From: Octopus bimaculoides
Taxonomy: Eukaryota
Direction of reading: 5' to 3'
DNA length: 64,000 nucleotides
NCBI RefSeq assembly: GCF_001194135.2
Contig: NC_069006.1
Span: forward strand, 17,773,313-17,837,312
The position numbers were made by a program, and so were the translations under genes. Below, piece after piece: positions 13,746 through 63,712 of this stretch. The stretch's first letter is position 1; every line of letters starts with the position of its first letter. The notes beneath the pieces were generated by a model, which worked only from the letters and a program-made list of their open reading frames with translations, ran no database searches and was not told where the DNA came from.

Positions 13746-13949
13746 ACTCTTTTTACCTGTTTCAGTCATTTGACTGTGGCCATGCTGGAGCACCGCCTTT
13801 TTAGTCAAGCAAATCGACCCCAGGATTTATTCTTTGTAAGCCTAGTACTTATTCTATCGGTCTCTTTTGCCGAACCGCTAAGTTACGGGGACATAAACAC
13901 ACCAGCATCGGTTGTCAGGCGATGTTGGGGGACAAACACAGACACACAA

Positions 13950-13980
<31 letters not shown>

Positions 13981-14167
13981 TACATACATACATATACATA
14001 TATACGACGGGCTTCTGTCAGTTTCCGTCTACCAAATCCACTCACAAGGCTTTGGTCGGCCCGAGGCTATAGTAGAAGACACTTACCCAAGGTGCCACGC
14101 AGTGGGACTGAACCCGGAACCATGTGGCTGGTAAGCAAGCTACTTACCACACAGCCACTCCTGCGCC
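13746..14167 (-). mobile_element. SINE family A, full length and young (CpGs intact)
   Basis: On the - strand: GGCGCAGGAGTGGCTGTGTGGTAAG (A box), GGTTCAGTCCC (B box), CORE-like GGCACCTTGGGTAAGTG, central (TA)n(TG)n and an AAAAGAGT tail. Confidence 0.95.
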
Positions 14168-15120
14168 TATGCTTATCTTTATTTGTGTGTGTGTTCATAG
14201 ATATAGATACATACTAGGTGCTTGTTTGTATATGTATGTATGTATAAAATATACTGGCATATACATACTGCAAGCTCTCAAGTCTCATTAATACTCGCTC
14301 GCACTTTGCTTATGTTTATTCTCCTTAATTAAATACCTCCAGAAATTTCAATTGATCTATGTAGTGTTTTAGATACAAACTCCAGCGATAGGGTTTCAAT
14401 TTCTCGTTCAGGTCCAAGCATGATCGCTTAATCATTCAGTGGGCATCAGATATTTGTGTACAGAGGAAGGGAAGTCTGGCTTAGAAATTGTCTCAGATCA
14501 ACCCTGAGTTCCCGCCGTGACCATCTTACCTTTTGTTTTCAAACGAGCAGCTTCATGTTTCGAATGTAGATTGTGTGTGTGTGTGAGAGAGGGAGAGAGA
14601 AGATGAGAAACATGCAGATAGATAGATAGACAGACAGACAGGTAGATAGATAGATGGATGGACGGGTAGGCAGACAGGTAGATAGATAGGCAGATAGATA
14701 GATAGATAAGGTTGTGTTCCGAAGGTCCTGCTTGGAAACAGCAATGGTGTTGAGAGAGAGTTTTGACTGTTATTTCTAAGAGAACTCCGGTGAACAGTTT
14801 CGTATGTTGGTTTTCGGTACACTTGACACTGCTAAAGAAACGCTTCAACGCCGCCGAATCTCGTGCTTATATCTAGGTCCTAGATCTCACATTTGTGTGA
14901 AGGGCAGAAAATTGTTATTCGATATGTATATTTATATGTATGTTTGTATATGTATATCTACTACACACGTATGTATACATATATTTGGTCAAGGCAGTGT
15001 ATTTTAACGTCTGTTTTTATGTAGTGTTATTTGCATGTATGTATAGATGTGTGTATATAAACAAACATGGGCTGAAGGATCTACTCAACACATTTTAAGT
15101 AGGGCGTCACATTTATTTGT

Positions 15121-18063: not shown

Positions 18064-18169
18064 TTACCTTTACTAACCATCTCCAATACTACAGCTAGCT
18101 ACCTCTCATTATTACCACTCTCACTACTATCTCCAACTCTACAGCCAACTATTATTATTATTATTATTA

Positions 18170-18660
18170 TTATTATTTAAGGTGGCAAGCTGGCAAAATC
18201 GTTAGCATGCCAGGAAAAATGCTTCGTGGTATTTCATCTGCAGCTACGTTCTGAGTTCAAATTCCACTGAGGTCGACTTTGCCATTCATAACCCTAACCC
18301 TAACCCATCCTTTCAGGGTCGATAAATTAAGTATCAATCAAGTACTGGGGTCGATGTAATTGACTATCCCCCTCCCCACAAATTCTAGACCTTGTGCCTA
18401 TAATAGAAAGGATTATTATTATTATTGTTATTAGGGGCGAGCTGGCAGAGTCGTTGGCATTCTGGGCAAAATGCTTAATGGTTTTTCATTCATCTTTACA
18501 GCTCTGAGTTCAAATTCCACCAGGGTTGACTTTGCCTTTCATCCTTTCAGGGTCAATAAGTACCGGTTGAACACTGGGGTCAATGTAATCAACTTATCCC
18601 CCATCCCTGAATTTGCTGGTCTTGTGCCAAAATGTGAAATCATTATTATTGTTGTTGTTG
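18170..18660 (+). mobile_element. Head-to-tail SINE family B pair
   Basis: Two bodies separated by (ATT)n. The first carries a (TAACCC)3 insert. Confidence 0.9.
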
Positions 18661-18685
18661 TTGTTGTTGTTGTTATTATTATTAC

Positions 18686-19205: not shown

Positions 19206-19625
19206 TTGCTATAACGATATTTCGCCCATCACTACGTTCTGAGTTCAAATTCTGTTGAGGTCAACTTTGCCTTTCATCTTTTTGGGGTTGATAAATTAAG
19301 TATCAGTTGAAGACTGGAGTTGATGTAATCGGATAGTCCCCTCCCTCCAAATTTCAGGCCTTGAACCTTCAGTAGAAAGGATCAATATTAATATTATTAA
19401 GGCAGCGAGCTTGCAGAATTTTTAGCAAACCAGACGAAATGCTTAGTGGTATTTAGCCCATAGCTACATACTGAGTTCAAATTCCACTGAGGTCGACTTT
19501 GTCTTTCTTCCTTTTGGGGTCGATTAACTAAGTACCAGTTACACACAGGGGTCGATGTAATTCACTTAATCCCCTTCCCACAAGCTGCCCTTGTGGCAAA
19601 AATTTGAAATCATTATTATCATCAT
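19206..19625 (+). mobile_element. SINE family B pair
   Basis: Same motifs as 18170-18660. Confidence 0.85.
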
Positions 19626-23019: not shown

Positions 23020-23443
23020 CAACAAGCTAGCAGAATTGTTAGCATGCTAGGCAAAATACTTAGCAGCATTTTGTCTGTCTTTACTTTTTGAGTTCAAATT
23101 CCGCCTAGGTTGACTTTGCCTTTCATCTTTTCAGAGTTGATAAAATAAGTACCAGTCAAGATCAATGTAATTAATGTCATCCCAAGTCTTCAAAGCAGCT
23201 GCCCTTGTGCCAAAATTCGAAACCATTATTATTATTATTATAGCAGCGATCTGGCAGAATCATTAGCACATCAGGCAAAATGCTTAGCAGCATGTTGTTC
23301 ATCATTACATTCTGAGTTCAAATTTCGCCAATGTCAACTCTGCCTTTCATCATTGCAAGTATGAGTTTCACACTGGGGCCCCGGTGTAATTGACTAGCTC
23401 CACTCCCCCAAAAATTTCAGGCCTTGTGCTTGTAGTAGAAAAT

Positions 23444-23478
<35 letters not shown>

Positions 23479-23835
23479 TATTATGGTCGTGAACTAAAAG
23501 AATCATTAGCTTGCTGGACAGAATGCTAAGGATTTTGTCCATTTGTCCAGCTTTGTGTTTTGGACTCCGATTCTTTCATTTTGTCAGGGTCAATAAAATA
23601 AGTACCAGTTGAACCCTGGGGGTTGAAATAATCAACTAGGAGCTGGCAGGTTCCTTACTGTACCAGGCAAAATGCTTAGTAACATTTTAAACATCTTTAC
23701 ATTCTGAATTCATATTCCATGGAGTCTGACTTTTGCTTTCATCCTTTTGAGGTCACTAGGGTTAATATAATTGACTTATCACTGCCCCCAAAATTGCTGG
23801 CCTTGTGTCAAAATTTGAAACCATAATTATTATTA
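23020..23835 (+). mobile_element. Array of four head-to-tail SINE family B copies
   Basis: Repeated GGCA(A/G)..TAGCAGAAT heads separated by (ATT)n. Confidence 0.85.
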
Positions 23836-25814: not shown

Positions 25815-26605
25815 NNNNNNNNNNNNNNNNNNNNNNNNNNNNNNNNNNNNNNNNNNNNNNNNNNNNNNNNNNNNNNNNNNNNNNNNNNNNNNNNNNNNNN
25901 NNNNNNNNNNNNNNNNNNNNNNNNNNNNNNNNNNNNNNNNNNNNNNNNNNNNNNNNNNNNNNNNNNNNNNNNNNNNNNNNNNNNNNNNNNNNNNNNNNNN
26001 NNNNNNNNNNNNNNNNNNNNNNNNNNNNNNNNNNNNNNNNNNNNNNNNNNNNNNNNNNNNNNNNNNNNNNNNNNNNNNNNNNNNNNNNNNNNNNNNNNNN
26101 NNNNNNNNNNNNNNNNNNNNNNNNNNNNNNNNNNNNNNNNNNNNNNNNNNNNNNNNNNNNNNNNNNNNNNNNNNNNNNNNNNNNNNNNNNNNNNNNNNNN
26201 NNNNNNNNNNNNNNNNNNNNNNNNNNNNNNNNNNNNNNNNNNNNNNNNNNNNNNNNNNNNNNNNNNNNNNNNNNNNNNNNNNNNNNNNNNNNNNNNNNNN
26301 NNNNNNNNNNNNNNNNNNNNNNNNNNNNNNNNNNNNNNNNNNNNNNNNNNNNNNNNNNNNNNNNNNNNNNNNNNNNNNNNNNNNNNNNNNNNNNNNNNNN
26401 NNNNNNNNNNNNNNNNNNNNNNNNNNNNNNNNNNNNNNNNNNNNNNNNNNNNNNNNNNNNNNNNNNNNNNNNNNNNNNNNNNNNNNNNNNNNNNNNNNNN
26501 NNNNNNNNNNNNNNNNNNNNNNNNNNNNNNNNNNNNNNNNNNNNNNNNNNNNNNNNNNNNNNNNNNNNNNNNNNNNNNNNNNNNNNNNNNNNNNNNNNNN
26601 NNNNN
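25815..26605. other. Assembly gap (representative)
   Basis: Run of N. Other gaps: 5887-6292, 6802-7068, about 28977-29200, 32522-32731, 41280-42079, 50661-51225, 55997-56103, 57234-57444, 63310-63525 and two short ones near 38505 and 52334. Confidence 1.
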
Positions 26606-28330: not shown

Positions 28331-29200
28331 AAAAGAAAGATATATAAGCAGGACAGATTCACAGACAGATATGTGTGTTTTGGATATGTAAATGTAGTTA
28401 CATACTCATGCACACCCATACTCACACGTGCACACACATGGATATGAAATGTTATGTTTAGTAAAATGATACTGATTACAATCAACCTCCGCTCTTAAAT
28501 CTTTCTCCCTTTAGTCACCCCAACTCTCTGTCTCCCTATATATATATATATATTCTCCACTACCCTATATCGACTCTGTTTTTTCTCTTACATATCCTAA
28601 GATCTGGGTCTGTCACTATTGTTGCCTCACCCTTCCCACACTACATTTACCAACCGACCAGCCAGCCAGTCAACCAGGGTACATAGAGGAGCATATATTA
28701 ATGTCACTAGTGGCTGGACTAAGAACTAGAGGGAGATGAGTGTGGGGTACTGTGACACTAGCAGCTGGATGGCATTAAGACATTCTTTGGAATATAGGGG
28801 ACAGAGAACCATTCAAATGCATACACTCACACATACACTCATACACACATTGTGCGTATTAGATATGTTTGCATGTGTGTGTGTGTGTGTATACACACAC
28901 ACACACACTAATTCATAAACATGTGGGAAGCAAATTGTTACCACACAGCTATGCCTTATATATATATATATATATANNNNNNNNNNNNNNNNNNNNNNNN
29001 NNNNNNNNNNNNNNNNNNNNNNNNNNNNNNNNNNNNNNNNNNNNNNNNNNNNNNNNNNNNNNNNNNNNNNNNNNNNNNNNNNNNNNNNNNNNNNNNNNNN
29101 NNNNNNNNNNNNNNNNNNNNNNNNNNNNNNNNNNNNNNNNNNNNNNNNNNNNNNNNNNNNNNNNNNNNNNNNNNNNNNNNNNNNNNNNNNNNNNNNNNNN

Positions 29201-31517: not shown

Positions 31518-33109
31518 TTACACACACACATGCATACTTACACAGAGGTATACATTACATATATACATACGCAAATATATGATATATATGCACACGCAGT
31601 TTTAAGCGTATGCATATACATACACAGTAGTGCTTGAGTGAAACGAATCAGTTGCCAGCCAGTTTCCAGCATCTTACTAAAAATACTCCTAGTGTCAGTT
31701 ATAAAATGTTAATATATACCTTGAAGAAATTTCCTTGTATCTATCCACACCTCCTTTCTCCTTCTTTTTCTTTCTCTTTCTAAAAACAATCTAGGAAGTT
31801 AGTTTATCTCTCAATGTGGTGGCCACGACAGTCATAAATTACCATCAAACAAACTAATACACACTTCTTTCTCGCTTTACTCTATTCAAATAGAGATTTT
31901 ACATCCTTTACCATAAATTTTCTTCATAGCTATTTGCTCTTGCTTTTATTGTCTTGTTTGGGTCATGGAGGTTTGGTGGTGGTGGTGGTGGGGGGGTATT
32001 GCCCCCCCTCCTTCTTTCTCTTCAAGTTCTTGCTGTGTTTTGTACATGTACTTTGTACAGCTTTCAGCTTTTAACTGTCATAATCTCTGGTATAGCAAGA
32101 AGCGCTATCAAACACCTACCTGGTTTTTAGTAGCTCATTAAATCAGAAAACACTTTGATGTGGAAGCTCTGACGGTTCCACCTGTTTTAATAACCGTTAT
32201 CCAGAGGAATTAATTAGGGTTAATTTCTGGTGTTTCCTTTTAAGATAACGCAGTTTTTAAAAGAACTACTTGGATGGCTTACTTATATCCATAATACTTT
32301 GCCATTATTATTTATTTCACTTGCAGAGTTTTGACAAATAGCTGTTGTCATTTGTGGGATGGATCTGGCTATTGGCCAAGATCAATTTGAACTCGGAACA
32401 GAAGGCCAGAAGATATACCACTAAACGTTTTGTCCAACAGGCTAACAATTCTGGAAGCTAGCCACCTTAAACAATAGAAATAAATAATCCTTTCTACTTT
32501 CAGACACAAGGACTGAAATTTNNNNNNNNNNNNNNNNNNNNNNNNNNNNNNNNNNNNNNNNNNNNNNNNNNNNNNNNNNNNNNNNNNNNNNNNNNNNNNN
32601 NNNNNNNNNNNNNNNNNNNNNNNNNNNNNNNNNNNNNNNNNNNNNNNNNNNNNNNNNNNNNNNNNNNNNNNNNNNNNNNNNNNNNNNNNNNNNNNNNNNN
32701 NNNNNNNNNNNNNNNNNNNNNNNNNNNNNNNTTTTTTTTCTTCTATCATGCAAACAACTCTGCCTGCTTGATGCCTAAATGATAATGGTTTCAAATTTTG
32801 GCACAAGGCCAGCAATTTCAGGGGTGGGGTTAAGTTGATTACATCAACTCCAGTGCTCAACTGGTATTTATTTTATCGACTCCAGAGGATGAACTGTGAA
32901 GTTGACCTCGGCAGAATTTGAACTCAGGACACAAAGACAGAATAGATGCCACATTTTGTCCAGCACACAAGCAATTCTGTCTGCTTGTTTTTGTTACTGG
33001 GTGTGAATGTCTGTTGGTATCATGAGAGTAAACAGATACATAATGTTGGCGGAAGGGAAACTAGAGGTTCAAATATGCTGGTTTTCACCATGGTATTTTC
33101 ACTGGTCCT

Positions 33110-33799: not shown

Positions 33800-34262
33800 G
33801 GGAGATATTTGTCTCTCATTCAGTGCCACATAAAAAGCACTGGTGCTGGTGCCAAGTAAGAAGCATTGGAACTGGTGCCACATAAAAAGCACCCAGTACA
33901 CTCTGTAAAGTGGTAAGCAATTAGGAAGGGCGTCCATGCCAAAACTGACCTCACCTGTGCTTGTGCCCGGTAAAAAGCCCTCAGTCCTCTCTATTGAGTA
34001 ATTGGTGTTAGGAAGGGCATCCAGCCACAGAAACCTTGCCAAAACAGACACAGAAGTCTGGGGCAGGCTCCTGCCTGGCCAGCTCCTGTCAAATCGTCCA
34101 ACCCATGCCAGCATGGAAGGCAGACATTAAACAATGATGATGATGATGATCCGGCCCTAGAAACCAAGTCCAGAACAAACAATGGAGCCTGGTGCAGCTC
34201 CCTACCTTACCAGCTCCTTATCAAACCGTCCAACCCATGCTAGCATGGAAAATGAACATTCA
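33800..34262 (+). mobile_element. Retroposon family C ending in (GAT)n, plus a second 3' piece
   Basis: GGAAGGGCATCCAGC..AAACCGTCCAACCCATGCCAGCATGGAA..(GAT)n. Also at 41245-41279, 44775-44915 and 59800-60055. Confidence 0.75.
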
Positions 34263-35049
34263 CTTAACATCTCTGTAGAACTATCCACCAGCACCATATG
34301 AAACCCTGCAGTAGTAGATCTATTATCATTACGAAACGATAAACTTTTAAGTTTAATCTCACATAAAGCACTGTGCTGTCTTAACCTCCCACCTCTTTAC
34401 CACAATGATTTACATTTCTTTTCATGTTTTTCTTCTCTTCACATCTCTTTTTTCTTTCTGTCATTCTTTTGTGTTTGTAATCAGTTCTGTGGGAATAGAC
34501 AGTCCAGTCAGCTGTACAATTAATAGCTCATAGTTACTGATTCACTGGAAATCTTCAGAGACAAACTTATCTAAGGCGTCATCAGTAGTTTATAGAGAAA
34601 ATGTTGTCATCATCATGATATAATATTAAATATCCTTGAAGGATTTGGCAGAAAACTAGTGAAGAGTACTGTCTCAAACCATTGATTTCTTTTCCTGCCT
34701 TTTTGATGTATGTGGTTGCTTCTAACCCCTCTCCCTCTCTCCTTCTCTCTCTCTCTCTCTCTGTCTCTCTGACCTTTGCCATGATTATTCTATAAATTGA
34801 TGTACATTGTTTTTTAATTTGCTACCTTAATCCAAATGTAAATGTCATTTTATGTCAATATCTTGTATTTGGGACAGTTATATGGTCTCTGTATTAGTGT
34901 AGTGGCAGAAGTTGGGGGTGATGTAGGGAGTTATATTGATTAGTGGTGAGGGGGAGGAGTGCACAATGTGGTTGTTTTTGCGTTTGTTTTGTTTTTAATC
35001 ACCTTAGCATCTGTTCATCCACCCACCCACCCCCCGTCCATACATATAG

Positions 35050-35425
35050 GTGCAGGTGTGGCTGTGTGGTAAGAGGCTTACTTCACAACCACATAGTTCT
35101 GTATTCAGTTCCACTGCACGGCACCTTGGGCCAGTGCCTTCTACTATAACCTCAGGCTGATCTATGCTTTGAATGGATTTGGTAGACAGAAACTGAAAGA
35201 AGCCTGTCATGTACGTGTGTCTGTGTTTGTCCCCCGCCACTGCTTGACAACTTGTGTTGGTGTGTTTATGTCCCTGTAACTTAGCAGTTTGGCAAAAGAA
35301 ACTGATAGAATAAGTACCAGGCTTTAAAGAATAAGTATTGAGGTTGACTCATTCAACAAAAAATTCCTCAAGGTGGTGCCCCAACATGATGGCAGTCTAA
35401 TTACTGAAACAAGTAAAAGATAAAG
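35050..35425 (+). mobile_element. SINE family A, full length
   Basis: GGTGTGGCTGTGTGGTAAG head through to the GAAACAAGTAAAAGA tail. Confidence 0.9.
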
Positions 35426-35799
35426 ATACATTCCTCCAAATATACTTCAGTGCTATTTGAAGGCCATATTGTTCTTTTAGCCCTAGGTTCCACCCTGACC
35501 CAGCAGAACTATGAGGGAAAGTATTATAGCCAAGACTCCTTCACTCCTTTAGGACTAAATGAGCTGATCCAATGTATCTTTCTGATTTGAGGGAGATTTC
35601 TTTGCATTACTTATACTCCCTTCTGCCCCCTCCCCCCACACACATCTATATATTGCAGGTTCAGTTAATAGTATCCACTATGGTACTGAAATGTGATTGG
35701 CTAGATATTTTCTCCTATTGTTCAACTATGTTATGTCTCTAGCTGTTTGTGACAGTCAAACATTTATTATTCCATCCATCTTTTTTGCCTGCTGTACTT

Positions 35800-36110
35800 T
35801 GGAGAGTCTTAGAGCTAGAGTCCTTGGGTACCACCTTGTCCATAGGGTCCTATCAGAAGCAATCATCATTAGACTCTTCAGCTGGATTCCCAAATGTGAC
35901 CAACTGAGGCTATGGATATTATCTAACCATCTTGTTCTTGGTCTACCCCTAGGTCTCCTGCCACTTGGCTCATCTTGAAGAATTCATCTTGCAATTCTTT
36001 CCTGCTACATTCTAATCACATATCCACAGTACCAGAACCGTGACCTCTCAAGTGCAAAGAAGTTAGCAGCTTGACCTGGAGAAACTCCCTGCTCTCTGAG
36101 CTATGCATCC
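35800..36110 (-). mobile_element. RTE-clade LINE ORF2 C-terminal remnant with stop codons
   Basis: The - strand translates as ERSRFWYCGYVIRM*QERIAR*ILQDEPSGRRPRGRPRTRWLDNI, matching the RTE motifs W.GHV.RM and G.RPRGRP..RW.D.I. Confidence 0.85.
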
Positions 36111-36326: not shown

Positions 36327-36780
36327 TTAAGTACCCTGTGCTCTTGTGTATTGTACATACCCCAGCTTCTCTTTTGCCACTCTACATATTCTGAGTGTAA
36401 GTCTTAGGTATGTTTCATGTAGCTTCTCCTTGTCTACTCTCTGTGTTCCGAGTCTTAGATCTGATTCTATAGGAAAAGCTTCTCTTTTGAGACTTTTCAT
36501 GTTCTGTAAATCTTGGCTGTGATTCTGTATAAGAGAGCATGTCTTCTTCATTCCCTTGTCCTGCTCTACGAAATAGAGTTCCATCCTATGAAATTTAGTG
36601 TAGCTGTTCTCCCAATTTGGTCCTGCCATGCTTTGATCTTTCTTTCCCTCTGGCTCCTAGCTTGACACCTGTCCTACCAGAAAACCTGAGGTAGACAAGC
36701 AACGACAAACAAATCTTAATCCTTCACTTGGTGTCATACTGTCTGACCCTTGGGTGTCTTTTGAGGAATTGCAAGCTTCC
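36327..36780 (-). mobile_element. Probable decayed LINE AP-endonuclease remnant (contains ORF 36327-36629)
   Basis: Ordered motif echoes: EGLRFVC (like NG.RL..FC), KAW-AGPN across a 1-nt frameshift (like TW..P), ELYFV (like IDYILV), SDLRL (like SDHRL). Same strand as the adjacent RTE piece. Confidence 0.5.
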
Positions 36781-38050: not shown

Positions 38051-39203
38051 AATAATAATAATAATGATAATGTGTGTGTCTATGCATTTTCGGGGGATTT
38101 GTTTTTTTCCTGTCACAACACGCTATTGAATACATTGTGGCTTACTGCAAAGTTGAAAGGGTAAGCTGCTGTTCTATTGTATGCACATGAATATATGCAG
38201 CATGCACATGCGTGTTGCACAGAGATAACATACACAAGCATGTATTTATAAAGTAAATATGTGAAATGCACATGCAAGGATGCATGCATTTGTATACACA
38301 CACATAAATGTATGTATGTGTAAATGTGTCTGTGTTTATAAAAATGTGTATGTATATTGATGTGTGTGTGTGTGTGTGTGTGTTTTATTATATGTATAAA
38401 CTTAGATATAACATGACTGTTATGCTATTAGGAAGCTGTGAAGTAGAAAACTGGAACCATTATGAATCATAGGTGATATTATATGTTGAAGATACCCCCC
38501 CCCCNNNNNNNNNNCTATTTTTTTTGTGTGTGTCTCCATGGATGAGACTAGCAGCTGAATGAGGAGCTGATGGCTAGGGCTTTGCAACCTTGACCTGTCC
38601 ATCAGGAAATGGACAGGGTATGGATGATAGGGGTCACAGTAACATCCTGTCAAGTGAATCTTCAAAGTCTGATCTGATCTGATCTTCTCCACCCCCTACA
38701 CACACACACACACATCTTCAGTGGAGTGGCTGAGTGGAACGGTGGATCACGGTGATGAATTAATTGCTATTGTAGTTTGTTCTGTTGAAATAGAGCAGAT
38801 GCATGTCTAAGACCTTACACCAACAACATCACCAGCAGCATCATCAACAACAAGACCATGGGCCCATACTTGATCACTGGATTTACTAGAAATAGCAGAA
38901 TATCCTTATTACTATATAAAATGGGAAGTATACATTGGACAACCAGGTGTATAGGATATACAAAATGGCAGGATGGTCATAGCTGGAATACATTTGAACA
39001 CAGGTGTACTCAGTTTGGACTGACTCGTGGCTAAACAACTCTGTCAATGTTAGTCACTTTATGATGGTTATTACTATTATTATTTTGAAGGCAATGAGCT
39101 GGCAGAATTGCAGAATTTCCAAAACTTCACACCTTGTGCCTGTAGTTGAAAGGATTATTATTATTATTATTATTATTATTTTTATTATCATCATCATCAT
39201 CAT

Positions 39204-39589: not shown

Positions 39590-40250
39590 CATGCCGGGCA
39601 AAATGCTTAGCAGTATTTCACCTGTCCTTATATCCTACGTTCAAATTCCACCATGGTCCAGTTTCCCTTTCATCCTTTCAGAGTCAGTAAAGTACCAGTG
39701 AAACACTGGGGTCGATGTCATCAACTAGACCCCTTCCCCGCAAAATTTCAGGCCTTGTGCCCATGGTGGAAAGGATAATTATTATTATTATGGTTGCAGG
39801 CTGGGAGAATTGTTAGCACACCAGATGACAGATGAAATGCTAAGTGGTATTTTCGTTCATCTTTAGGATCTGAGTTAAAATTCCGCCAAGGTTGAATTTG
39901 GACTTTTGTCCTTTCAGGGTCAATATAATAGGTACTAGTTGAGCACTGAGACAGGGGGGGGGGTCAATGTAATCAACTTACCCACTGCCCTTGGGCCAAA
40001 ATTTAAATTTATACTCTAAGTAGTGGTGGGAAGGCAACTTACTTTATTGGATCTCTGTTCTATGTTCAGATGCTGCCAAGGTTGACTTGGCCTTTCATCC
40101 TTTCAGGGTCAATCAATTAAGTACCAGTTGAGTACTGGGGTTGATGTAGTCAACTAGCCCTCTCCGCCAAAATTTCAGACCTTATGCCTTTAGTAGAAAG
40201 GATTATTATTATTATTGTTATTATTGAAAGCAGCAAGCTGGCAGAATCTG
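39590..40250 (+). mobile_element. Array of three SINE family B copies
   Basis: Repeated bodies and (ATT)n tails. Confidence 0.85.
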
Positions 40251-40553
40251 GTGAGAATTGGTGATGGGAAGAGCGTCCAGTCATAGAAAATCTGCATTAA
40301 TAAACTCTTTTGGACCGATGCAAGTGTGGAAAAGAAAAGTAGATGCTACATGATGATGATCATAATATTTATATTGGAGTTGGTACACTTCACTCTAACT
40401 TCTTCTGTGGAAAGCTTGTTGTTGTGTCTAGCCATGAGAAACCATAGCAGAAAATTATAGTCTGAGATATTCCAAGATTTCCAAAAGAAAGAAAGACAAA
40501 ATTAATTCCAAACATTATTGAATGACTCAGATTTTCAACAATTCAAAGCAATT

Positions 40554-40594
40554 TTTACTATTCTTTATTTTTCTTCTTCTCTTTTTAGGTAAGT
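40554..40594 (+). other. Candidate recursive splice site (zero-length exon)
   Basis: tttactattctttatttttcttcttctctttttAG|GTAAGT: branch-like TTTAC, a long pyrimidine tract, and AG immediately followed by a perfect donor. Confidence 0.55.
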
Positions 40595-40994
40595 TCAATA
40601 GTTGTAACAGACGTTGGGTGGATATTTTACCATGGCTAACTGAATGGAACCAGTACCAGGTTTGACGGTTCTTTTGTAAACTATTTTAGTGTGTTGTCAT
40701 ATATATATATGTGTGTCTGTGGCCTAGAGGTCTGAAACACAGACCTGGAAATACAAGATCACAAAAAGAATGACCCGGGTTTAGATCCTGCTGGAGACAG
40801 GATTTTGGAAAGCAGTAGGGACACACGTAGGAGTTATGACCTGGATGGGCCTGGCTCCCATAGAGTACCAGGAATAAGGGCCAAAACACTTATTGGATGA
40901 GAGTTCTTCCACTGAAGATCTCTCCTGCTGTGTGCTTGCCTTACAGCAAGTTTCTGGTATATATATATATTTGGAAATGTGCTGTGCGTGAGAA

Positions 40995-41279
40995 GACCCG
41001 GCAAGCCAAGTAAGATCGTTGCCAGTGCCCCTGGACTGGTTCTTGTGCGGGTGGCACATGAGATGCACCATTTTGAGCGTGGCCGTTGCCAGTACTGCCT
41101 GACTGGCTCCTGTAGGATTTTCGAACGAGATCGTTGCCAGTGCCCCTGGACTGGCTTGTGCGGGTGGCACATAAAAGACACCATTTCGAGCGTGGCCGTT
41201 TTCGTGCGGGTGACACGTAAAAGCACCCACTACACTCTCTGAGTGGTTGGCGTTAGGAAGGGCATCCAGCTGTAGAAAC
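40995..41279 (+). mobile_element. Young family C retroposon 5' region with an internal ~115-bp direct repeat
   Basis: GATCGTTGCCAGTGCCCCTGGACTGG at 41014 and 41129. CpG-rich, and runs into a gap. Confidence 0.75.
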
Positions 41280-43163
41280 NNNNNNNNNNNNNNNNNNNNN
41301 NNNNNNNNNNNNNNNNNNNNNNNNNNNNNNNNNNNNNNNNNNNNNNNNNNNNNNNNNNNNNNNNNNNNNNNNNNNNNNNNNNNNNNNNNNNNNNNNNNNN
41401 NNNNNNNNNNNNNNNNNNNNNNNNNNNNNNNNNNNNNNNNNNNNNNNNNNNNNNNNNNNNNNNNNNNNNNNNNNNNNNNNNNNNNNNNNNNNNNNNNNNN
41501 NNNNNNNNNNNNNNNNNNNNNNNNNNNNNNNNNNNNNNNNNNNNNNNNNNNNNNNNNNNNNNNNNNNNNNNNNNNNNNNNNNNNNNNNNNNNNNNNNNNN
41601 NNNNNNNNNNNNNNNNNNNNNNNNNNNNNNNNNNNNNNNNNNNNNNNNNNNNNNNNNNNNNNNNNNNNNNNNNNNNNNNNNNNNNNNNNNNNNNNNNNNN
41701 NNNNNNNNNNNNNNNNNNNNNNNNNNNNNNNNNNNNNNNNNNNNNNNNNNNNNNNNNNNNNNNNNNNNNNNNNNNNNNNNNNNNNNNNNNNNNNNNNNNN
41801 NNNNNNNNNNNNNNNNNNNNNNNNNNNNNNNNNNNNNNNNNNNNNNNNNNNNNNNNNNNNNNNNNNNNNNNNNNNNNNNNNNNNNNNNNNNNNNNNNNNN
41901 NNNNNNNNNNNNNNNNNNNNNNNNNNNNNNNNNNNNNNNNNNNNNNNNNNNNNNNNNNNNNNNNNNNNNNNNNNNNNNNNNNNNNNNNNNNNNNNNNNNN
42001 NNNNNNNNNNNNNNNNNNNNNNNNNNNNNNNNNNNNNNNNNNNNNNNNNNNNNNNNNNNNNNNNNNNNNNNNNNNNNNNCTATATTTTGAATGAAGACTC
42101 CTTTTCACAACATCTTTCTAATGAAATGCACTGTTTATTTATTTCAATTAATTTTGAAAATAATCGAAAATTTGCAAAAATTTTGTAAAAAACAAAAAAA
42201 CAAAACAAAAAAAAAAACAAAGGAAAAAACCATTTTTCCCTTGATTAAAGGCAGCATTTGGAATGGTTCATTTGTTCTTAGGTCTAATTTTTTGCAAGCT
42301 AGTATGGCTTTGATAAGAATTCTTGTGGTTATATTGATGATCTTCTTAATACCAACCCTTTCTTGTTTCCAAGTGAGGTACTTATTCTGCAGGCCTGTGC
42401 ACATCGTTACTAAACTGCTAGACATATTACATGGAACATCAACAACACCACCACAGTCAAAACAATACCAGTGTAAGACATATACACACACAGACACACA
42501 CACACACATACAGCATTCTGTATACCTTATTTAGCATGAATAAACTATAGAAAGTCGCAAAACTGCAGTATTCATCATGAGAAAGCTTCTCGTGTAGATG
42601 TAGAGTGTTAAAAAATAAAAGTGTAGAAGTAGTAGTAGGTGACAAGAAGTGCTTTTTAGCACTATATGTTTGTCTATATGAGAAACTTTCTCAAGACAAA
42701 AACTGAAGTTTTGTGGCTTTCTATAGTATATCCACATTAAGTGATATATACACAATGTTATTTTTACCCATTATTCTTAACCAATACTGTTTCCATCATT
42801 AATAACACATTTTTACTCAACATGCCACATACATACACATAGACACACACACAAGCATATGTGTAGGTATGTAAATATATATATGTATGTATGTATGCAT
42901 ATATGTATGTGTATGTGCATGCATACAGACGTGATGTGTGCTTTTTCCATCTCTCAAATTTCACTCCTACGATAATGGTCAGCCTGAGTCTTCAATTACA
43001 GTTTCTTGCCTAATTTGCCATGCATTAGAAATGATCCCCAAACCACAAGGTTGCAAAGCAAAAGTCTTAGTCACACAACAATGAAATATATATATATATA
43101 TATATACTGGTGAAACTCAGAGTAACGGTTTTTATGTTATATTTCTGCTGCTTTTAAATAAAG

Positions 43164-43195
<32 letters not shown>

Positions 43196-43214
43196 CATAT
43201 ATATATCATGTTGG

Positions 43215-43525
43215 AGCAAATTGACCCCAGAGCTTATTCTTTGTAAGCGTCGTACTTATTCTGTCAGGGACGCAAACACACCAGCATCGGTTGTCAAGTG
43301 ATGCTGGGGGGACAAACAGACACACAAACATATACACACATACATATATATATATATATATACACATATACGACAGGCTTCTTCCAGTTTCCGTTTACCA
43401 AATCCACTCACAAGGCTTTTGTCTGCCCAAGGCTATTGTAGAAACACTTGCCCAAGGTACCACGCAGTGGGACTGAACCTGGAACCATGTGGTTGGTAAG
43501 CAAGCTATTTACCACACAGCCACTC
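43215..43525 (-). mobile_element. SINE family A, internally deleted
   Basis: Head ends at CACACAGCCACTC, abutting the Penelope-like piece. Confidence 0.85.
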
Positions 43526-44329: not shown

Positions 44330-44537
44330 ACTCTTTTACTTGTTTCAGTCATTTGACTGCGGCCATGCTGGAGCACCGCCTTTAGTTGAGCAAATCGACC
44401 CCAGGACTTATTCTTTGGAAGCCTAGTACTTGTTCTATCGGTCTCTTTTGCCGAACCACTAAGTTACGGGGACGTAAACACTCCAGCATCGGTTGTCAAG
44501 CGATGTTGGGGGGACAAACACAGACACATAAACATAC

Positions 44538-44600
<63 letters not shown>

Positions 44601-44765
44601 TACGACAGGCTTCTTTCAGTTTCCGTCTACCAAATCCACTCACAAGGCTTTGGTCGGCCCGAGGTTATAGTGGAAGACACTTGCCCAAGGTGCTATGCAG
44701 TGGGAATGAACCCGGAACCATGTGGTTGGTAAGCAAGCTACTTACCACACAGCCACTCCTGCGCC
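44330..44765 (-). mobile_element. SINE family A, full length and young
   Basis: Nearly identical to 13746-14167. Confidence 0.95.
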
Positions 44766-47700
44766 TATATATATATATCCAGCTGTAAAAACCATACCAA
44801 AGCAGACCTTGCCAGTGCTGGTGCCATGTAAAAAACACCCAGGCCACCCTGTAAAGTGGTTGGTGTGTTAGGAAGGGTATCCAGCTATAAAAACCATGCC
44901 TTAACTGACCTCTTTTATTCCACTTGTTGCTACATGTCAAACTGCTGACTCAGTGTCAAAATATACAGTAACACATGTCATTGAGACACACAAGCTCTCA
45001 CACTACAACAAGGGCCAGGCAATGTAACCTTCATGTATGCTCTGTGCTCTCAGTGGAGTATAGGCCATTGACCACTTTCCTCACCGGTTTTTGACTCTCA
45101 GGCCTTGTTGGTTTCAAATTGTCATTGACACTTTTGTAAGTTTCCTTTTTTCTCTAGGTAGGGATGTTGGCCCTAAGCAAACATTTTCTTTTTACCTCTG
45201 GGATGATGTGGTCTGCATTAATCTTGTCTCTTGATCTACTCAATGTAGCAGCTAACTGCAGGGGGAACTACACTACCTAGAAAGGGGGTTTCTGTGTTTT
45301 TTATTAATCCTCTCAGTAGCTGTTTAATTTGCATCAACAAAAATACTTCCTAAAGATTTTAAAATGAGGTTCCTATACTCTAAGTCATGCTTATTAGACA
45401 TCGTCTGCCCAATAGAGTTGGCCCTCCACTGCTAGCAATATAAATTTCAAATTTTGGCACAAGACCAGCAATTCTGGGGAAGGGTGTAAGTCAGTTACAT
45501 CAGCTTCAGTACTCAACTGATATTTAGTTTATCAACCTTGAAAGGATGATCTTGGCAGAATATGAACTCAAAATACGAAGATGGATGAATTACTGCTAAG
45601 CATTTTGTTCAGCATGCTAATGATTCTGCCAGCTTGTCACCTTACTACAAATATAAATTTAACATTTCATTCAATCAGCTGTCTTCATTTCTGTCTTGTA
45701 GTGGTGGCCACTCACCAAACACAAATTATTGCCCTACTCCGGTCTTCTCTGGATCACCTTAAAATGGGGTACAAAGTAACCAATTTTTATCTCAGTGTGT
45801 GTTTCTATCGATTGAGCATATATATACATCTGTATACATCATTCCAACAGTTGTTTATGGCCAAGATATTCTTTATAGGAAACCATTTCTTTTAAGAGCT
45901 TAACCTTTCACCGGTGGTAAATATTAAATGTAATGTATATATTTACTGCGCATTGATAAGATGCACTCTATCACCGCAGCATCAGCATGTGAATGCGGAC
46001 AGATAGTGCATTATTATAACAGCATTGTAGAGTAGAGCTGAGTTGGTGGGTGTTGTTGTTGTTATTGAAATGCTCTAAAATATCAGCTGCTGTGCACCAG
46101 CAAGTGCAAAACTCCAGCGCATATTGCATCTTGTTTGGCAAAGAGCAGAAGAAAAAAAACATATGAATTATAGAAAGAATTTGTGTTTTGATGTATTGCG
46201 TTGAAAATGGAGGGAGCAACCCTACCCTCCACCAATCATCACAACCACCATGTTGCTTGTAACCTCAGCCAACAAAGTAACCCTTGCCTGATGTCTCGGG
46301 TTGCTAGAAATACCAGTAAAATCTCCTCAAACTACACTAACAGTCTTCGAAGCGGGTGCTTTGGTTAATGTATTCGAAATTCGCTATATGTGGTAAAAAG
46401 GCGAGATGGTCACAACTGGAATGCTTTTGATCTTAGATCATCTTGTACAGGGTTAAGCTGGGAGTTATACAACAATCTTGTTGCTTGACCTGCTTTCAAA
46501 GAATGGAGAAAAATTTCTTGCAAATCAATCATAACATTGTTTTAAAAGGAGAAAAGCATGTTTAATGCAACCTTACTAAAAAGCTGTAAAGGTCATTGCC
46601 AGAATGCTGCTAATTGTAGATGCATGTGCTTGGTCAAAATTGACCTGGGGCTAAACCACAACAAATCTTATTAAAACAATATAGACCAGAATAACTTGGT
46701 ACTTTCTGCCAGCTTCCTGGAACTCTCTTCCTGCAGACATCAACATTTTTCTGTGCATTCATTTGCTTCTAATTAGAATACATTGGCCATAAGTGATAAC
46801 GATGATTATCAGGATCTTTCTGGAATTAGCATCATAATTAGGATAATTAAGAGAAAAAAAAGTGATGGTGTCAGAGAGAGGAGGGGGAAGAAAAAATTAA
46901 TAATCTGTTTGGTTTCTCTGCTGAGTTCTTCTCTTTATTTTAAAATTATTTTATGATTTAAATTATTTTTTTTATTAGTCTTATTTGTTAGCAGCATAAA
47001 TGAGAGAGATGTAATTTTTTTAAATATATATTTGACCATGTTATTTACTGGTCTAGAGAGATTGTTGTTTAGATTTAGGTCGGCCCTGACTGGAAAGACA
47101 TAATATGATCAAACGCATTCTAAATATGACCACCTCTCCTTTTCGGATGTTTCAAAGTGTAGAATTCTGTAGTGTATCCTCTTCCTTTTCAAGATGGTAG
47201 GCTGTGATTTGAGAGAGCTTCAGCTGTTATTTCTAGCAAGCCAAGCAACCATATAGTAGCTCCCTCACCGACAGGGTCAATAACTGTTGATCAACTCTAT
47301 TTCAGCAGACTTATATTCAAAGGCAATCCAATTATGACCATCCTATCTTTTACAGATCATCCATTTCAGTTGAGATCAGAGGTTCTTGAGGTCCATATAA
47401 GATTTTACTGTTAAAAATTCATCTGCAGGAAACTAGCCAACTTCCAATGAGTGGAGGCCTTTGTAGTAGAGAGAGGGGAGACAGCATGTTCTGTGGGCCA
47501 GTGTCTGGAGTGTGTCTCTCAGTGTCTTTATGCTAATCAATCAGGTGCCCCTTTTCAAGACAGGGTCAAGGATGTCTGTGTGTATGAAGGTGTGTCACTT
47601 ATTGCCTTAGGCTATTCAGCTCACAATTGTGAGTTCAGTTTCAGGCAGCAGCTTGTGTCCCCTAGCAAAACATTTTATTTCACACTGCTCCAGCCCACTC

Positions 47701-50600: not shown

Positions 50601-51829
50601 ACGGCCGTGTGGTTAATTAGCTCGCTCGACAATCATGTTTCGGGGGTTCGATCCTAGTGCNNNNNNNNNNNNNNNNNNNNNNNNNNNNNNNNNNNNNNNN
50701 NNNNNNNNNNNNNNNNNNNNNNNNNNNNNNNNNNNNNNNNNNNNNNNNNNNNNNNNNNNNNNNNNNNNNNNNNNNNNNNNNNNNNNNNNNNNNNNNNNNN
50801 NNNNNNNNNNNNNNNNNNNNNNNNNNNNNNNNNNNNNNNNNNNNNNNNNNNNNNNNNNNNNNNNNNNNNNNNNNNNNNNNNNNNNNNNNNNNNNNNNNNN
50901 NNNNNNNNNNNNNNNNNNNNNNNNNNNNNNNNNNNNNNNNNNNNNNNNNNNNNNNNNNNNNNNNNNNNNNNNNNNNNNNNNNNNNNNNNNNNNNNNNNNN
51001 NNNNNNNNNNNNNNNNNNNNNNNNNNNNNNNNNNNNNNNNNNNNNNNNNNNNNNNNNNNNNNNNNNNNNNNNNNNNNNNNNNNNNNNNNNNNNNNNNNNN
51101 NNNNNNNNNNNNNNNNNNNNNNNNNNNNNNNNNNNNNNNNNNNNNNNNNNNNNNNNNNNNNNNNNNNNNNNNNNNNNNNNNNNNNNNNNNNNNNNNNNNN
51201 NNNNNNNNNNNNNNNNNNNNNNNNNTATTGCCAGAAACAACAGCTAAGTTTCTTTTTCTAAAATTTTACATAGTTCAACCGACACACCTGAATGTGTGAT
51301 GAACAAAAGAATTTTGAAAACAGTAGGTATAAAACTAATTTCTAAACACCAAATGGCTATGGGGGTTTCACTAGAATAAAATTGTAACTAAAGGGGTCCA
51401 TAGATAAAAAAAAAAAAAAAGTTAAGCACTGGTTACATGTGGCAGACACAGTTTGGTGATTTAGCTCCAGGTCAGCTCTGGCCGAACAGACGAATGCTCC
51501 ACCTGTGATCATCCTCTCACTCACTTTTGTAATGCATGACCACGTTTATGTGTTATGTCTTAGCTTTTTAAAGACGTCAGAGCTTGATAGGAATGAGATT
51601 TCGTTGCTACTCCTAGCAGGTCGCGGTCTAGTTCCAAATAGATTTTTATCACATCCTGTTAGGCTAATACTACATATCTGCGACGCGTTAGTAGTGAGAG
51701 ACTCGGGATCGATCCCCAGCACAGGTCACTTCTACTGCTGCAACTATTCCTAGATTAAACGCCATACCTTTTAAATCTGATCCGTTTTTGAGATCTAATC
51801 TGTGATTGAGATGGAATAGATCCCCTTTT

Positions 51830-52230: not shown

Positions 52231-52547
52231 ACACGCACGCCCTCACATACTCGTTTTTCCCGCCTCCAACACAAACTAGAACACAATGGTAAGGCGCCGA
52301 GAGGGACACAGACATGATTGTGTTCGCAATCACNNNNNNNNNNNNNNNNNNNNNNNNNNNNNNNNNNNNNNNNNTATTTAACATGTTCACAAACTAAAAA
52401 GAAAAAGAAACCTTTATTCCATCTCCATTGTCGCTCGGTCTGCTAGAAATAGCAGCCAAATCTCCCTCATTGCCAAACCAGCCTCCTGTCTGTCTGTAGT
52501 CTCCTGTTATACAACTACTGGTTTCTTTAATAGTAGCAATTAATGAT

Positions 52548-55996: not shown

Positions 55997-56103
55997 NNNN
56001 NNNNNNNNNNNNNNNNNNNNNNNNNNNNNNNNNNNNNNNNNNNNNNNNNNNNNNNNNNNNNNNNNNNNNNNNNNNNNNNNNNNNNNNNNNNNNNNNNNNN
56101 NNN

Positions 56104-57089: not shown

Positions 57090-57445
57090 TATCGTTGTCG
57101 TTGTTCAGTAAACTGAAGAAACATTCTGATCTATTCAATACTCAACCTTTTGTTATAACTGTTGTTTGCTCATTCAGTATGGGTGTATATGTATGTGAAA
57201 TAAATAATTCTTTTCTTTTTTTCAAATGTCACCNNNNNNNNNNNNNNNNNNNNNNNNNNNNNNNNNNNNNNNNNNNNNNNNNNNNNNNNNNNNNNNNNNN
57301 NNNNNNNNNNNNNNNNNNNNNNNNNNNNNNNNNNNNNNNNNNNNNNNNNNNNNNNNNNNNNNNNNNNNNNNNNNNNNNNNNNNNNNNNNNNNNNNNNNNN
57401 NNNNNNNNNNNNNNNNNNNNNNNNNNNNNNNNNNNNNNNNNNNNN

Positions 57446-59411: not shown

Positions 59412-59625
59412 ACTCTTTTACTTGTTTCAGTCATTTGACTGCAGCCATGCTGGAGCACCGCCTTTAGTCGAGCAAATCGACCCCAGGACTTATTCTTTGT
59501 AAGTCTAGTACTTATTCTATCGGGCTCTTTTGCCGAACCGCAAAGTTACGGGGATCTAAACACACCACCATCGGTTGTCAAGCGATGTTGGGGGGACAAA
59601 CACAGACACACAAACATATACACAG

Positions 59626-59663
<38 letters not shown>

Positions 59664-59783
59664 GACAGGCTTCTTTCAGTTTCCGTCTACCAAATCCACT
59701 CACAAGGCTTTGGTCGGCCCGAGGCTATAGTAGAAGACACTTACCCAAGGTACCACGCAGTGGGAAAGAACCCGGAACCATGT
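59412..59783 (-). mobile_element. SINE family A, young and 5'-truncated
   Basis: Nearly identical to 44330-44720. Confidence 0.92.
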
Positions 59784-59799
59784 GTTTGAAGCACTTTTT

Positions 59800-60055
59800 T
59801 TTTTCCGCGCGTAAAAAATGCACTTGTTCCAGTGCCATGTGCCAGTGCCACAAACATGCACCCATACCAGTTGAAAATAGAAAGCCCTTGGCACACTTCG
59901 TAAAGTGGTTGGTGTGAGGAAGAGCATCCAGCTGTGGAAACCATGCCAACACAGACAAACGGAGCCTGGGCAGCTCCCCAGCCTTGCCAGCTCCTGTCAA
60001 ACTGTCCAACCCATGCCAGCATGGAAAATGGATATTAAACGATGAAGATGATGAT
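59800..60055 (+). mobile_element. Retroposon family C
   Basis: Matches 33900-34140 and ends in a GAT-rich tail. Confidence 0.75.
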
Positions 60056-62359: not shown

Positions 62360-62512
62360 TGTGGCTGAGTGGTAAGAAGCTTGCTTCCCAACCACATTGT
62401 TCTGGATTCGTTCCCACTGCGTGGCACTTTGGGCGAGTGTCTTCTGCTATAGCCTCAGGCTGACCAAAGTCTTATGAGTGGTTTTGGCAGGCGGAAACTG
62501 AAAGAAGCCTGT

Positions 62513-62570
<58 letters not shown>

Positions 62571-63170
62571 TGTGTATGTGTGTGACTTGTCCCCCACCAC
62601 CACTTGGCAACCAGTGTTAGTGTGTTTATGTCCTTGTAACTTAGTAGTTCAGCAAATGAGACCAATAGAAATTAAAATACTTCAAGCTGGTGCCCCAGCA
62701 AGGCCACAGTCTAATGACTGAAACAAACAGAAGATACACACACATACACACATATAAAGTGTAGGTGTAGCAAGTGTGGCTGTGTGGTAAGAAGCTTGCT
62801 TCCCAACCACATGGTTTGGGTTCAGTCCTACTGCATGACCCTTTGAACAAGTATCATCTACTGCAGCCCCAGGCTGACCAAAGCATTGTGAGTGGATTTG
62901 TAGATAGAAACTGAAAGAAGCCCATCGTATTTGTATGTGTGTCTGTGAATGTATCTTTGTGCCTTTGGTGTCTGTTGCCCACCACCACCACTTGACAACC
63001 GGTGTTGGTTTGTTTACATCCCTGTAATTCAGCAGTTCAGCAAAAGAAGCCGATAGGATAAGTATCAGGCTTAAAAATAAGTACCGGGCTGAATCTGTTT
63101 GACTAAACCCTTTAAGGCAGTGCCCCAGCATGGCCACTGTCCAATGACTAAAACAAGTAAATGTAAAAGA
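62360..63170 (+). mobile_element. Two tandem SINE family A copies
   Basis: Heads at about 62361 and 62776. Confidence 0.9.
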
Positions 63171-63213: not shown

Positions 63214-63712
63214 AGATGGACTATATGTAATCTGAACCTTTCCCCCCTTGTTTTATTTTATTTTTTTTACGGAATCCCACGTTTTAGGCTATGGAGATTC
63301 CGATTCTGANNNNNNNNNNNNNNNNNNNNNNNNNNNNNNNNNNNNNNNNNNNNNNNNNNNNNNNNNNNNNNNNNNNNNNNNNNNNNNNNNNNNNNNNNNN
63401 NNNNNNNNNNNNNNNNNNNNNNNNNNNNNNNNNNNNNNNNNNNNNNNNNNNNNNNNNNNNNNNNNNNNNNNNNNNNNNNNNNNNNNNNNNNNNNNNNNNN
63501 NNNNNNNNNNNNNNNNNNNNNNNNNACTAGTTTTGTGAGATTTGGCTGTTATTTCTAGCATGTAAATAGCCTGCTTGGTGGGGGGGGGGGTTGAAATTTT
63601 TCAAAGAATTTTTTTTCAGAATCGGAATCTCTATAGCCTAAAACGTGGGATTCCGTAAAAAAAAAATTAATAAATAAGGGGGGGAAAGGTTCAGATTACA
63701 TATAGTCCATCT
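63214..63712. mobile_element. Fold-back element with inverted ends of at least 95 bp spanning a gap
   Basis: 63214-63309 is the imperfect reverse complement of 63616-63712. Confidence 0.75.

What the first reader, a model, noticed from the sequence alone, without database searches (positions are those of the whole stretch)
40554..40594. Textbook recursive-splicing ratchet point (AG|GTAAGT) in a probable octopus long intron
Seen: branch-like TTTAC (A at 40557), a 38-nt AG-free stretch that is mostly pyrimidine, AG at 40587-88, and a perfect GTAAGT at 40589-94, all in unique sequence. Known: this is the recursive-splice (zero-length exon) signature of long Drosophila and vertebrate neural introns. 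Inference: a + strand gene with a very long intron is spliced recursively here. I am not aware of this being characterised in cephalopods. No equally good site was seen on the - strand.
Basis: partly seen in the sequence, partly recalled or inferred. Interest (0 to 1): 0.75.

Follow-up and report, generated by a model that had tools for sequence, protein, structure and literature searches.

The report
Perfect recursive-splice motif, use unproven
A textbook splice acceptor fused to a splice donor really is present in this octopod DNA, but I could not show that it lies in a transcribed intron or is ever used, and a genome this large should hold about a hundred such motifs by chance.

Summary
The window holds TTTAC (A at 40557), a 38-nt AG-free stretch that is 87% pyrimidine, AG at 40587-88 and GTAAGT at 40589-94. 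It is the only AGGTAAGT on either strand and by far the best acceptor|donor juxtaposition in the window. It lies in sequence with no other copy in the window.

I expect 0.001-0.01 sites this good per 64-kb window. That is unusual for one window, but it means roughly 40-400 chance sites in a ~2.7-Gb genome.

The interpretation could not be tested:
- No exon was found on either strand. Pfam gave nothing on all unique ORFs of 35 aa or more, and three protein searches on 12.8 k residues gave nothing.
- No transcript data and no cephalopod genome were reachable, so strand, intron status, usage and conservation are all open.

Weak indirect support exists. The + strand is pyrimidine-rich across the whole window, as on the coding strand of fly introns. 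CpG is strongly depleted, and octopus methylation sits in gene bodies. A repeat-derived ORF confirms an octopod origin.

My estimates are: chance motif with no dedicated role ~0.6, working recursive site ~0.25, edge of an ordinary or cryptic exon ~0.1. If real, it is one more member of a known kind. Interest is low until RNA or conservation data exist.

The parts
40554..40558 (+). Branch-point-like TTTAC (A at 40557), 31 nt upstream of the acceptor G
   Evidence: Fits yUnAy. Sequence match only.
40564..40568 (+). Second branch-point-like motif TTTAT (A at 40567), 21 nt upstream of the acceptor G
   Evidence: Sequence match only.
40549..40586 (+). AG-free stretch of 38 nt, 33 of them pyrimidines; the last 19 nt (40568-40586) are all pyrimidine, 19 of the last 20
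   Evidence: Only 4 of 3265 AGs on the + strand and 2 of 4045 on the - strand have 19 or more of 20 pyrimidines upstream.
40587..40588 (+). AG of a strong 3' splice-site motif (TAG|G)
   Evidence: With my approximate weight matrix, only 4 of 3265 + strand AGs score at least as high (the site included).
40589..40594 (+). GTAAGT, a consensus 5' splice site directly abutting the AG; TAG|GTAAGT pairs with 8 of the 9 positions that CAG|GTAAGT pairs with at the U1 snRNA 5' end
   Evidence: Only 3 of 3953 + strand GTs score at least as high (the site included). It is the only AGGTAAGT in the window. The U1 pairing is from established knowledge.
40589..40659 (+). Hypothetical cryptic RS-exon of 71 nt, ending at a weak donor CAG|GTTTGA (GT at 40660-61)
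   Evidence: Not informative: 27% of random + strand positions have an equal or better donor at +25..+100. No strong donor lies within 400 nt.

Best explanation
The motif is most likely a fortuitous meeting of two common things in repeat-rich, non-coding octopod DNA. One is a T/C-rich low-complexity tract ending in AG. The other is a GTAAGT hexamer. Together they look exactly like a recursive splice site but have no dedicated function.

Mechanistically the sequence is splice-competent. If the + strand is transcribed, U2AF and U2 could bind the tract, AG and branch point, and U1 could bind GTAAGT. It could then be used occasionally as a cryptic or stochastic recursive site. I know of no evidence that selection maintains it or that it is used.

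Shown: the sequence, its rarity per window, and the absence of any detectable exon or homologue nearby. Inferred: the chance origin, from base rates.
For: 1. Expected chance frequency is 0.001-0.01 per 64-kb window.
- 430 positions on the two strands follow a tract with 19 or more of 20 pyrimidines. Multiplied by P(AGGTAAGT) = 5e-6 to 2e-5, that gives 0.002-0.009.
- Six pyrimidine-tract AG sites x 0.052 x 0.0038 gives 0.0012.
- Dinucleotide shuffles give 0.01 for a 12-pyrimidine version.
- In a ~2.7-Gb genome (size from my own knowledge) that is about 40-400 sites.

2. The window shows no population of such sites. AGGTAAGT is not enriched (1 seen, 1-3 expected). Nor is the relaxed motif (9 against 6.5). 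Pyrimidine tracts are plentiful: 27 and 19 separate tracts on the two strands.

3. No exon or gene was found on either strand.
- Only 11 weak acceptor-ORF-donor candidates turned up.
- Pfam gave no hit on 21.8 k residues of unique ORFs.
- Searches of 5.8 billion protein clusters with 12.8 k residues gave no hit.

4. The O. bimaculoides genome is described as mostly intergenic (PMC9476566).

5. In the one large-genome animal counted carefully, use is rare: 20 recursive sites among 4.77 million sense-strand AGGT in mouse (PMC8797253).

Against: - The site is a clear outlier in its window, in the top ~0.1% for acceptor and for donor at the same base.
- It lies in non-repeated sequence.
- The + strand is T- and C-rich in unique DNA. 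The T excess holds in all eight 8-kb bins. [quoted passage not shown]
- CpG o/e of 0.38 suggests a methylated gene body.
- If cephalopods used recursive sites as densely as flies (>500 sites in a genome some fifteen times smaller; PMC8605326), real sites would outnumber chance ones and this reading would be wrong.
Confidence: 0.6

Rival explanations
1. It is a working recursive splice site (ratchet point) in a very long intron of a + strand gene. The upstream exon is first spliced to the AG at 40588. That puts GTAAGT directly after the exon and regenerates a 5' splice site, which is then used to remove the rest of the intron. Recognition would go through a short cryptic RS-exon that is always skipped because its own donor is weak.
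For: - The match to (Y)nNYAG|GTAAGT is complete, with branch point, AG-exclusion zone and a 19-nt pyrimidine run (consensus in PMC5126111).
- It is the best such site in 128 kb of strand sequence, with a per-window chance of 0.001-0.01.
- It lies in unique sequence.
- No exon was found for 40 kb upstream or 23 kb downstream, as expected inside a very long intron.
- The + strand carries T>A and C>G skews across the window, and CpG is depleted.
- A weak donor at +71 combined with a strong ratchet donor fits the donor-competition model (PMC8605326).
Against: - There is no evidence of + strand transcription, of a host gene, of splicing intermediates or of conservation.
- The downstream donor is no better than at 27% of random positions.
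- Chance sites are expected in the hundreds genome-wide.
- Large genomes studied so far rely on few such sites (mouse; lungfish preprint).
- Most of the octopus genome is intergenic.
- Position -3 is T, not the preferred C. This is minor.
Confidence: 0.25
2. It is the edge of an ordinary, unannotated or cryptic exon. Either the AG at 40588 is the acceptor of a short non-coding or poison exon, for example 40589-40659. Or GTAAGT is the donor of an exon that ends at 40588.
For: - Both splice signals are strong.
- A 71-nt segment ending at CAG|GTTTGA is available.
- In mouse, 46 of 84 recursive-site candidates turned out to be unannotated exons (PMC8797253).
Against: - The ORFs across and around the site have no homologue and no Pfam domain.
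- An exon ending in a 19-nt pyrimidine run would be odd.
- The downstream donor is weak and much poorer than GTAAGT, so skipping is predicted.
- No transcript evidence is available.
Confidence: 0.1
3. It is an intronic or intergenic U1 snRNP-binding site, or another non-splicing element that happens to contain GTAAGT. The pyrimidine tract would be incidental.
For: The complementarity to U1 is perfect (sequence; established knowledge). Conserved intronic U1 sites with other roles exist in flies (PMC4387717, listed).
Against: GTAAGT occurs 15 times on each strand of the window, so nothing singles this one out except the acceptor in front of it. No structure or RNA family matches: Rfam gave 0 hits and there are no inverted repeats.
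Confidence: 0.05

Closest known systems
Drosophila intronic ratchet points (zero-nucleotide recursive splicing; Ubx, kuz, Bx and >500 others)
   Same: Juxtaposed acceptor|donor with a long pyrimidine tract and AG|GTAAGT. Set in a long stretch without exons. A possible short out-of-frame cryptic exon with a weaker donor downstream (PMC8605326, PMC6110457, PMC5126111).
   Different: Fly sites are defined by junction reads, saw-tooth coverage and very strong conservation of the motif. None of these is known here. The host gene and strand are unknown. The organism is a lophotrochozoan with a genome some fifteen times larger, so chance matches are far more numerous.
Vertebrate recursive sites and RS-exons in long neuronal genes (Sibley et al. 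2015; mouse brain set, PMC8797253)
   Same: AGGTAAGT preference, pyrimidine enrichment in the 20 nt upstream, and the exon-definition model with a downstream donor.
   Different: Vertebrate sites lie in introns >51 kb of genes >294 kb, mostly first introns, and are conserved. Here intron and gene are not identified. Vertebrate sites are very few relative to motif matches.
Pseudo or cryptic splice sites in non-coding DNA
   Same: Strong consensus matches arising by chance, often from T-rich low-complexity tracts. There is no coding context, no homologue and no sign of use.
   Different: This one combines top-0.1% acceptor and donor scores at the same base. That is rarer than the usual pseudo site.

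Membership tests
Recursive splice site / intronic ratchet point | [quoted passage not shown] | tested here: met
   TTTTTCTTCTTCTCTTTTTAG|GTAAGT. 19 of 20 pyrimidines upstream, an AG-exclusion zone of 38 nt and two branch-point-like motifs.
Recursive splice site / intronic ratchet point | Lies on the sense strand inside a very long intron of an expressed gene | tested here: inconclusive
   No exon was found on either strand in 64 kb, which fits a long intron or intergenic DNA equally well. Only about half of the unique ORF residues could be searched for homologues. The + strand pyrimidine skew and CpG depletion are hints only.
Recursive splice site / intronic ratchet point | Splicing intermediates: junction reads from upstream exon to the site, saw-tooth intron coverage, lariats | not testable with these tools
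   No RNA-seq data are reachable.
Recursive splice site / intronic ratchet point | Strong evolutionary conservation of the acceptor|donor motif | not testable with these tools
   No cephalopod genome is searchable by DNA. An exact 23-mer across the site found nothing in metagenome contigs. ORFs spanning the site found no counterpart among public proteins or Logan ORFs.
Recursive splice site / intronic ratchet point | Downstream 5' splice site that defines a short cryptic RS-exon (~50 nt, weaker than the ratchet donor) | tested here: inconclusive
   CAG|GTTTGA at +71 scores 4.7, in the top ~8% of GTs. An equal or better donor occurs at 27% of random positions.
Ordinary protein-coding exon boundary | Open reading frame with protein homology or a domain on one side of the splice site | tested here: not met
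   ORFs at 40287-40685 on both strands have no Pfam domain and no homologue. A non-coding exon is not excluded.
Interspersed repeat (motif carried by a transposable-element family) | Other copies of the surrounding sequence | tested here: not met
   40305-40698 has no other copy in the window even with a 7-nt word size. Genome-wide copy number was not testable.

The most novel reading that the evidence does not exclude
The site is a conserved, constitutively used ratchet point in a giant intron of an octopod gene. It would be the first recursive splice site described in a cephalopod or any lophotrochozoan. That would suggest motif-defined recursive splicing is ancestral to Bilateria and is used in a large, long-intron invertebrate genome.
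Probability: 0.2. Interest if true: 0.45.

Novelty: new member of a known kind. Interest (0 to 1): 0.2.

Why it matters
If it were used, this would extend recursive splicing from insects and vertebrates to cephalopods, whose neural genes have very long introns. It would also give one concrete locus to test. One motif without RNA or conservation data does not do that. The practical value of this report is a base rate: a motif this perfect is expected roughly 40-400 times by chance in an octopus-sized genome. Motif-only calls therefore need a gene model, strand and RNA evidence before they deserve attention. Under either reading the thing belongs to a known kind, a recursive site or a pseudo splice site.

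Tried and rejected
1. Finding the host gene.
- Stop-to-stop ORFs in six frames were filtered for repeats and low complexity.
- An acceptor-ORF-donor scan gave only 11 weak candidates.
- Pfam on 21.8 k residues gave no hit. Sensitivity for short exons inside concatenated queries is limited.
- Three protein searches with concatenated ORFs of 2958, 4932 and 4944 aa gave no hit. Roughly half of the unique ORF residues, all ORFs under 35 aa and all ORFs in repeats went unsearched for homologues.

2. Reaching orthologous DNA.
- Exact look-ups of four window ORFs near the site (47, 147, 121 and 149 aa) found nothing on record.
- An exact 23-mer found nothing in metagenome contigs.
- The look-up of the UniParc-like hit P0002 found nothing.

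3. RNA families and tRNA scans found nothing in the window.

4. I considered whether the tract is the tail of a repeat or the motif belongs to a transposable element. No other copy was found and there are no inverted repeats.

5. Repeat orientation as a clue to strand gave 19:11 and 16:4 in favour of +. This is not interpretable. The TTTCAG excess on + (56 against 22) probably reflects family B copies, whose sequence contains TTTCAG and which are mostly in + orientation.

6. I looked for a genome-wide CpG baseline for octopus in the literature and did not find one.

7. The Duff et al. 2015 paper is not held in the library.

Full report
**Observation.**
- TTTAC fits the yUnAy branch-point consensus, with its A at 40557, 31 nt before the acceptor G. 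A second candidate, TTTAT (A at 40567), lies 21 nt before it.
- The previous AG ends at 40548, so 38 nt are AG-free. Of these, 33 are pyrimidines, and the last 19 form an unbroken pyrimidine run.
- AG at 40587-88 abuts a perfect GTAAGT at 40589-94.

**How unusual it is.** AGGTAAGT occurs once in the window on both strands together. Expectation is 1.05-2.2 from Markov models and 2.9 from dinucleotide shuffles, so the octamer itself is not special. What is unusual is the tract in front of it.
- Only 4 of 3265 AGs on the + strand and 2 of 4045 on the - strand have 19 or more of 20 pyrimidines upstream.
- With simple weight matrices of my own, which are approximate and not MaxEntScan, only 4 of 3265 acceptors and 3 of 3953 donors on the + strand score at least as high as this site. 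No other AGGT on either strand comes near it in both respects.

Three estimates of the expected number of sites this good per window agree within an order of magnitude.
- 430 positions preceded by such a tract, times 5e-6 to 2e-5, gives 0.002-0.009.
- Six tract-AG sites x 0.052 (AG followed by GT) x 0.0038 (GT followed by AAGT) gives 0.0012.
- Dinucleotide shuffles give 0.01 for a 12-pyrimidine version with one mismatch allowed.

The looser motif class is not enriched: 9 seen against 6.5 expected.

So the site would not be expected in a given window. A ~2.7-Gb genome (size from my own knowledge of Octopus bimaculoides) holds about 42,000 such windows and therefore about 40-400 chance sites. 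A reader free to flag any textbook motif also faces a large look-elsewhere effect.

**Surroundings.**
- The window is repeat-rich eukaryotic DNA with 12 N gaps, many microsatellites and several interspersed repeat families.
- A repeat copy ends at 40248/40304, and a microsatellite plus another element begin near 40699.
- The 394 nt in between, which hold the site, have no other copy in the window even at low stringency.
- There are no inverted repeats or tandem repeats at the site, no Rfam family and no tRNA.
- An ORF derived from the most abundant repeat matches 66 cluster representatives. These include a hypothetical protein of Argonauta hians and many Logan contigs.

**Is it in a long intron of a + strand gene?** This is the premise of the interpretation, and I could not establish it.
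- A scan for acceptor-ORF-donor combinations found only 11 weak candidates.
- All 21.8 k residues of unique stop-to-stop ORFs of 35 aa or more gave no Pfam hit.
- The most protein-like 12.8 k residues from both strands gave no hit among 5.8 billion protein clusters. That set included the five ORFs around the site and a LINE-like fragment.
- These searches have gaps: short exons, non-coding exons, ORFs inside repeats and about half of the unique ORF residues were not covered.

Sixty-four kilobases without a detectable exon fits a giant intron and intergenic DNA equally well. The O. bimaculoides genome is described as mostly intergenic (PMC9476566).

**Two indirect hints favour a genic, + sense location.**
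- In 39 kb of unique, non-simple sequence, the + strand has T>A by 6.8% and C>G by 5.0%. The T excess has the same sign in all eight 8-kb bins. [quoted passage not shown] Cephalopod data are lacking, and replication or old repeats could also cause it.
- CpG o/e is 0.38 in repeats and unique DNA alike, with TpG and CpA in excess. This is a mark of long-term germline methylation. In octopus, methylation is concentrated in gene bodies rather than in intergenic DNA or transposons. I found no genome-wide baseline, so this is a lead only.

**Other features of true recursive sites.**
- Fly and vertebrate work shows that recognition goes through a short cryptic RS-exon closed by a downstream donor that is weaker than the ratchet donor (PMC8605326; PMC6110457).
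- Here the best donor within 100 nt is CAG|GTTTGA at +71, which would give a 71-nt, out-of-frame cryptic exon. That is compatible with the model.
- However, 27% of random positions do as well, so it carries no weight.
- Conservation, the most useful sequence-level criterion, could not be tested. No cephalopod DNA is searchable here. An exact 23-mer across the site found nothing in metagenome contigs, and exact look-ups of nearby ORFs found nothing.

**Weighing it.**
- In flies, more than 500 ratchet points sit in a small genome and are confined to the longest introns, so a perfect motif in a long intron is usually real.
- In mouse brain, only 20 sites were found among 4.77 million sense-strand AGGT. 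A lungfish study found no expansion of conserved recursive sites with genome size.
- If octopus resembles the large-genome animals, chance sites outnumber real ones of this quality. If it resembles flies, the reverse holds.
- I combined a modest prior for a + sense intron, raised somewhat by the skew and the CpG depletion, with these two regimes.

My estimates are:
- about 0.25 that this is a working recursive site;
- about 0.1 that it is the edge of an ordinary or cryptic exon. In mouse, 46 of 84 recursive-site candidates were unannotated exons;
- about 0.05 for some other role of the U1-complementary hexamer;
- about 0.6 that it is a fortuitous, splice-competent but unselected motif.

**Comparison and novelty.** The anatomy is the same as Drosophila ratchet points and vertebrate recursive sites. 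Membership fails on no tested criterion, but only the motif criterion was met. The others were inconclusive or untestable. No paper in the searched library mentions recursive splicing together with octopus, and the one paper with 'cephalopod' is unrelated. A validated site would therefore be a first for the group, but still a new member of a known kind. As it stands it is a single motif match, and interest is low. An annotated assembly, brain total RNA-seq and an octopod alignment would settle it quickly.

Noticed in passing
window 1-64000: CpG is strongly depleted: o/e is 0.38 overall, 0.37 in both unique and repeated DNA, and 0.23-0.72 across 8-kb bins. TpG and CpA are in excess (~1.3). This suggests long-term germline methylation. 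In O. bimaculoides methylation is reported in gene bodies, not in intergenic DNA or transposons, so the window may be genic. I found no genome-wide baseline.
   Followed up: partly
window 1-64000 (unique, non-simple DNA, 38,981 nt): There is a consistent strand asymmetry. The + strand has T>A by 6.8% and C>G by 5.0%. The T excess is present in all eight 8-kb bins. The cause is unknown; it could be transcription, replication or old repeats.
   Followed up: partly
many copies, e.g. 13800-14170, 43165-43525, 44380-44790, 59462-59793 (+); 35040-35361, 62361-62670 (-): An abundant SINE-like family has about 30 long copies, 19 on + and 11 on -, each flanked by TA/CA microsatellites. Its ORF ('FRLPNPLTRLWSARGYSRRHLPKVPRSG...') matches an Argonauta hians hypothetical protein and many Logan contigs, which places the window in Octopoda.
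   Followed up: partly
40056-40304 and about 19 other places (e.g. 18154-18666, 19236-19559, 23092-23639, 39635-39948): A second repeat family ('...CCTTTCAGGGTCAAT...AAGTACCAGTTGAG...') often occurs in local clusters. Its orientation is strongly biased: 16 on + and 4 on -.
   Followed up: no
40715-41279 (+), running into the N gap 41280-42079: The element just downstream of the site has an A-box-like TGGCCTAGAGG and a B-box-like GGTTTAGATCC. It has an internal duplication of a ~75-nt segment (41013-41087 and 41128-41200, about 115 nt apart) and unusually long ORFs on both strands (up to 149 aa on -). Its 3' part recurs at 33874-34034, 44815-44894 and 59904-59941. ARAGORN and Rfam found nothing.
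   Followed up: partly
35759-35983 and 36330-36656 (-): There are protein-like ORFs on the - strand. One carries 'GRRPRGRPRTRWLD', which from memory resembles the C-terminal tail of non-LTR retrotransposon ORF2 proteins. No Pfam hit and no homologue were found.
   Followed up: partly
45144-45163 (+): The second-best acceptor|donor juxtaposition in the window is CCTTTTTTCTCTAG|GTAGGG, 4.6 kb downstream of the finding on the same strand. It is much weaker: 16 of 20 pyrimidines upstream, and an AG only 15 nt upstream.
   Followed up: no
5887-6292, 6802-7067, 25815-26605, 28977-29200, 32522-32731, 38505-38514, 41280-42079, 50661-51225, 52334-52374, 55997-56103, 57234-57445, 63310-63525: Twelve runs of N total 3848 nt. 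Several lie next to microsatellites or homopolymer runs, which suggests a short-read scaffold assembly. The nearest gap starts 686 nt downstream of the site.
   Followed up: no
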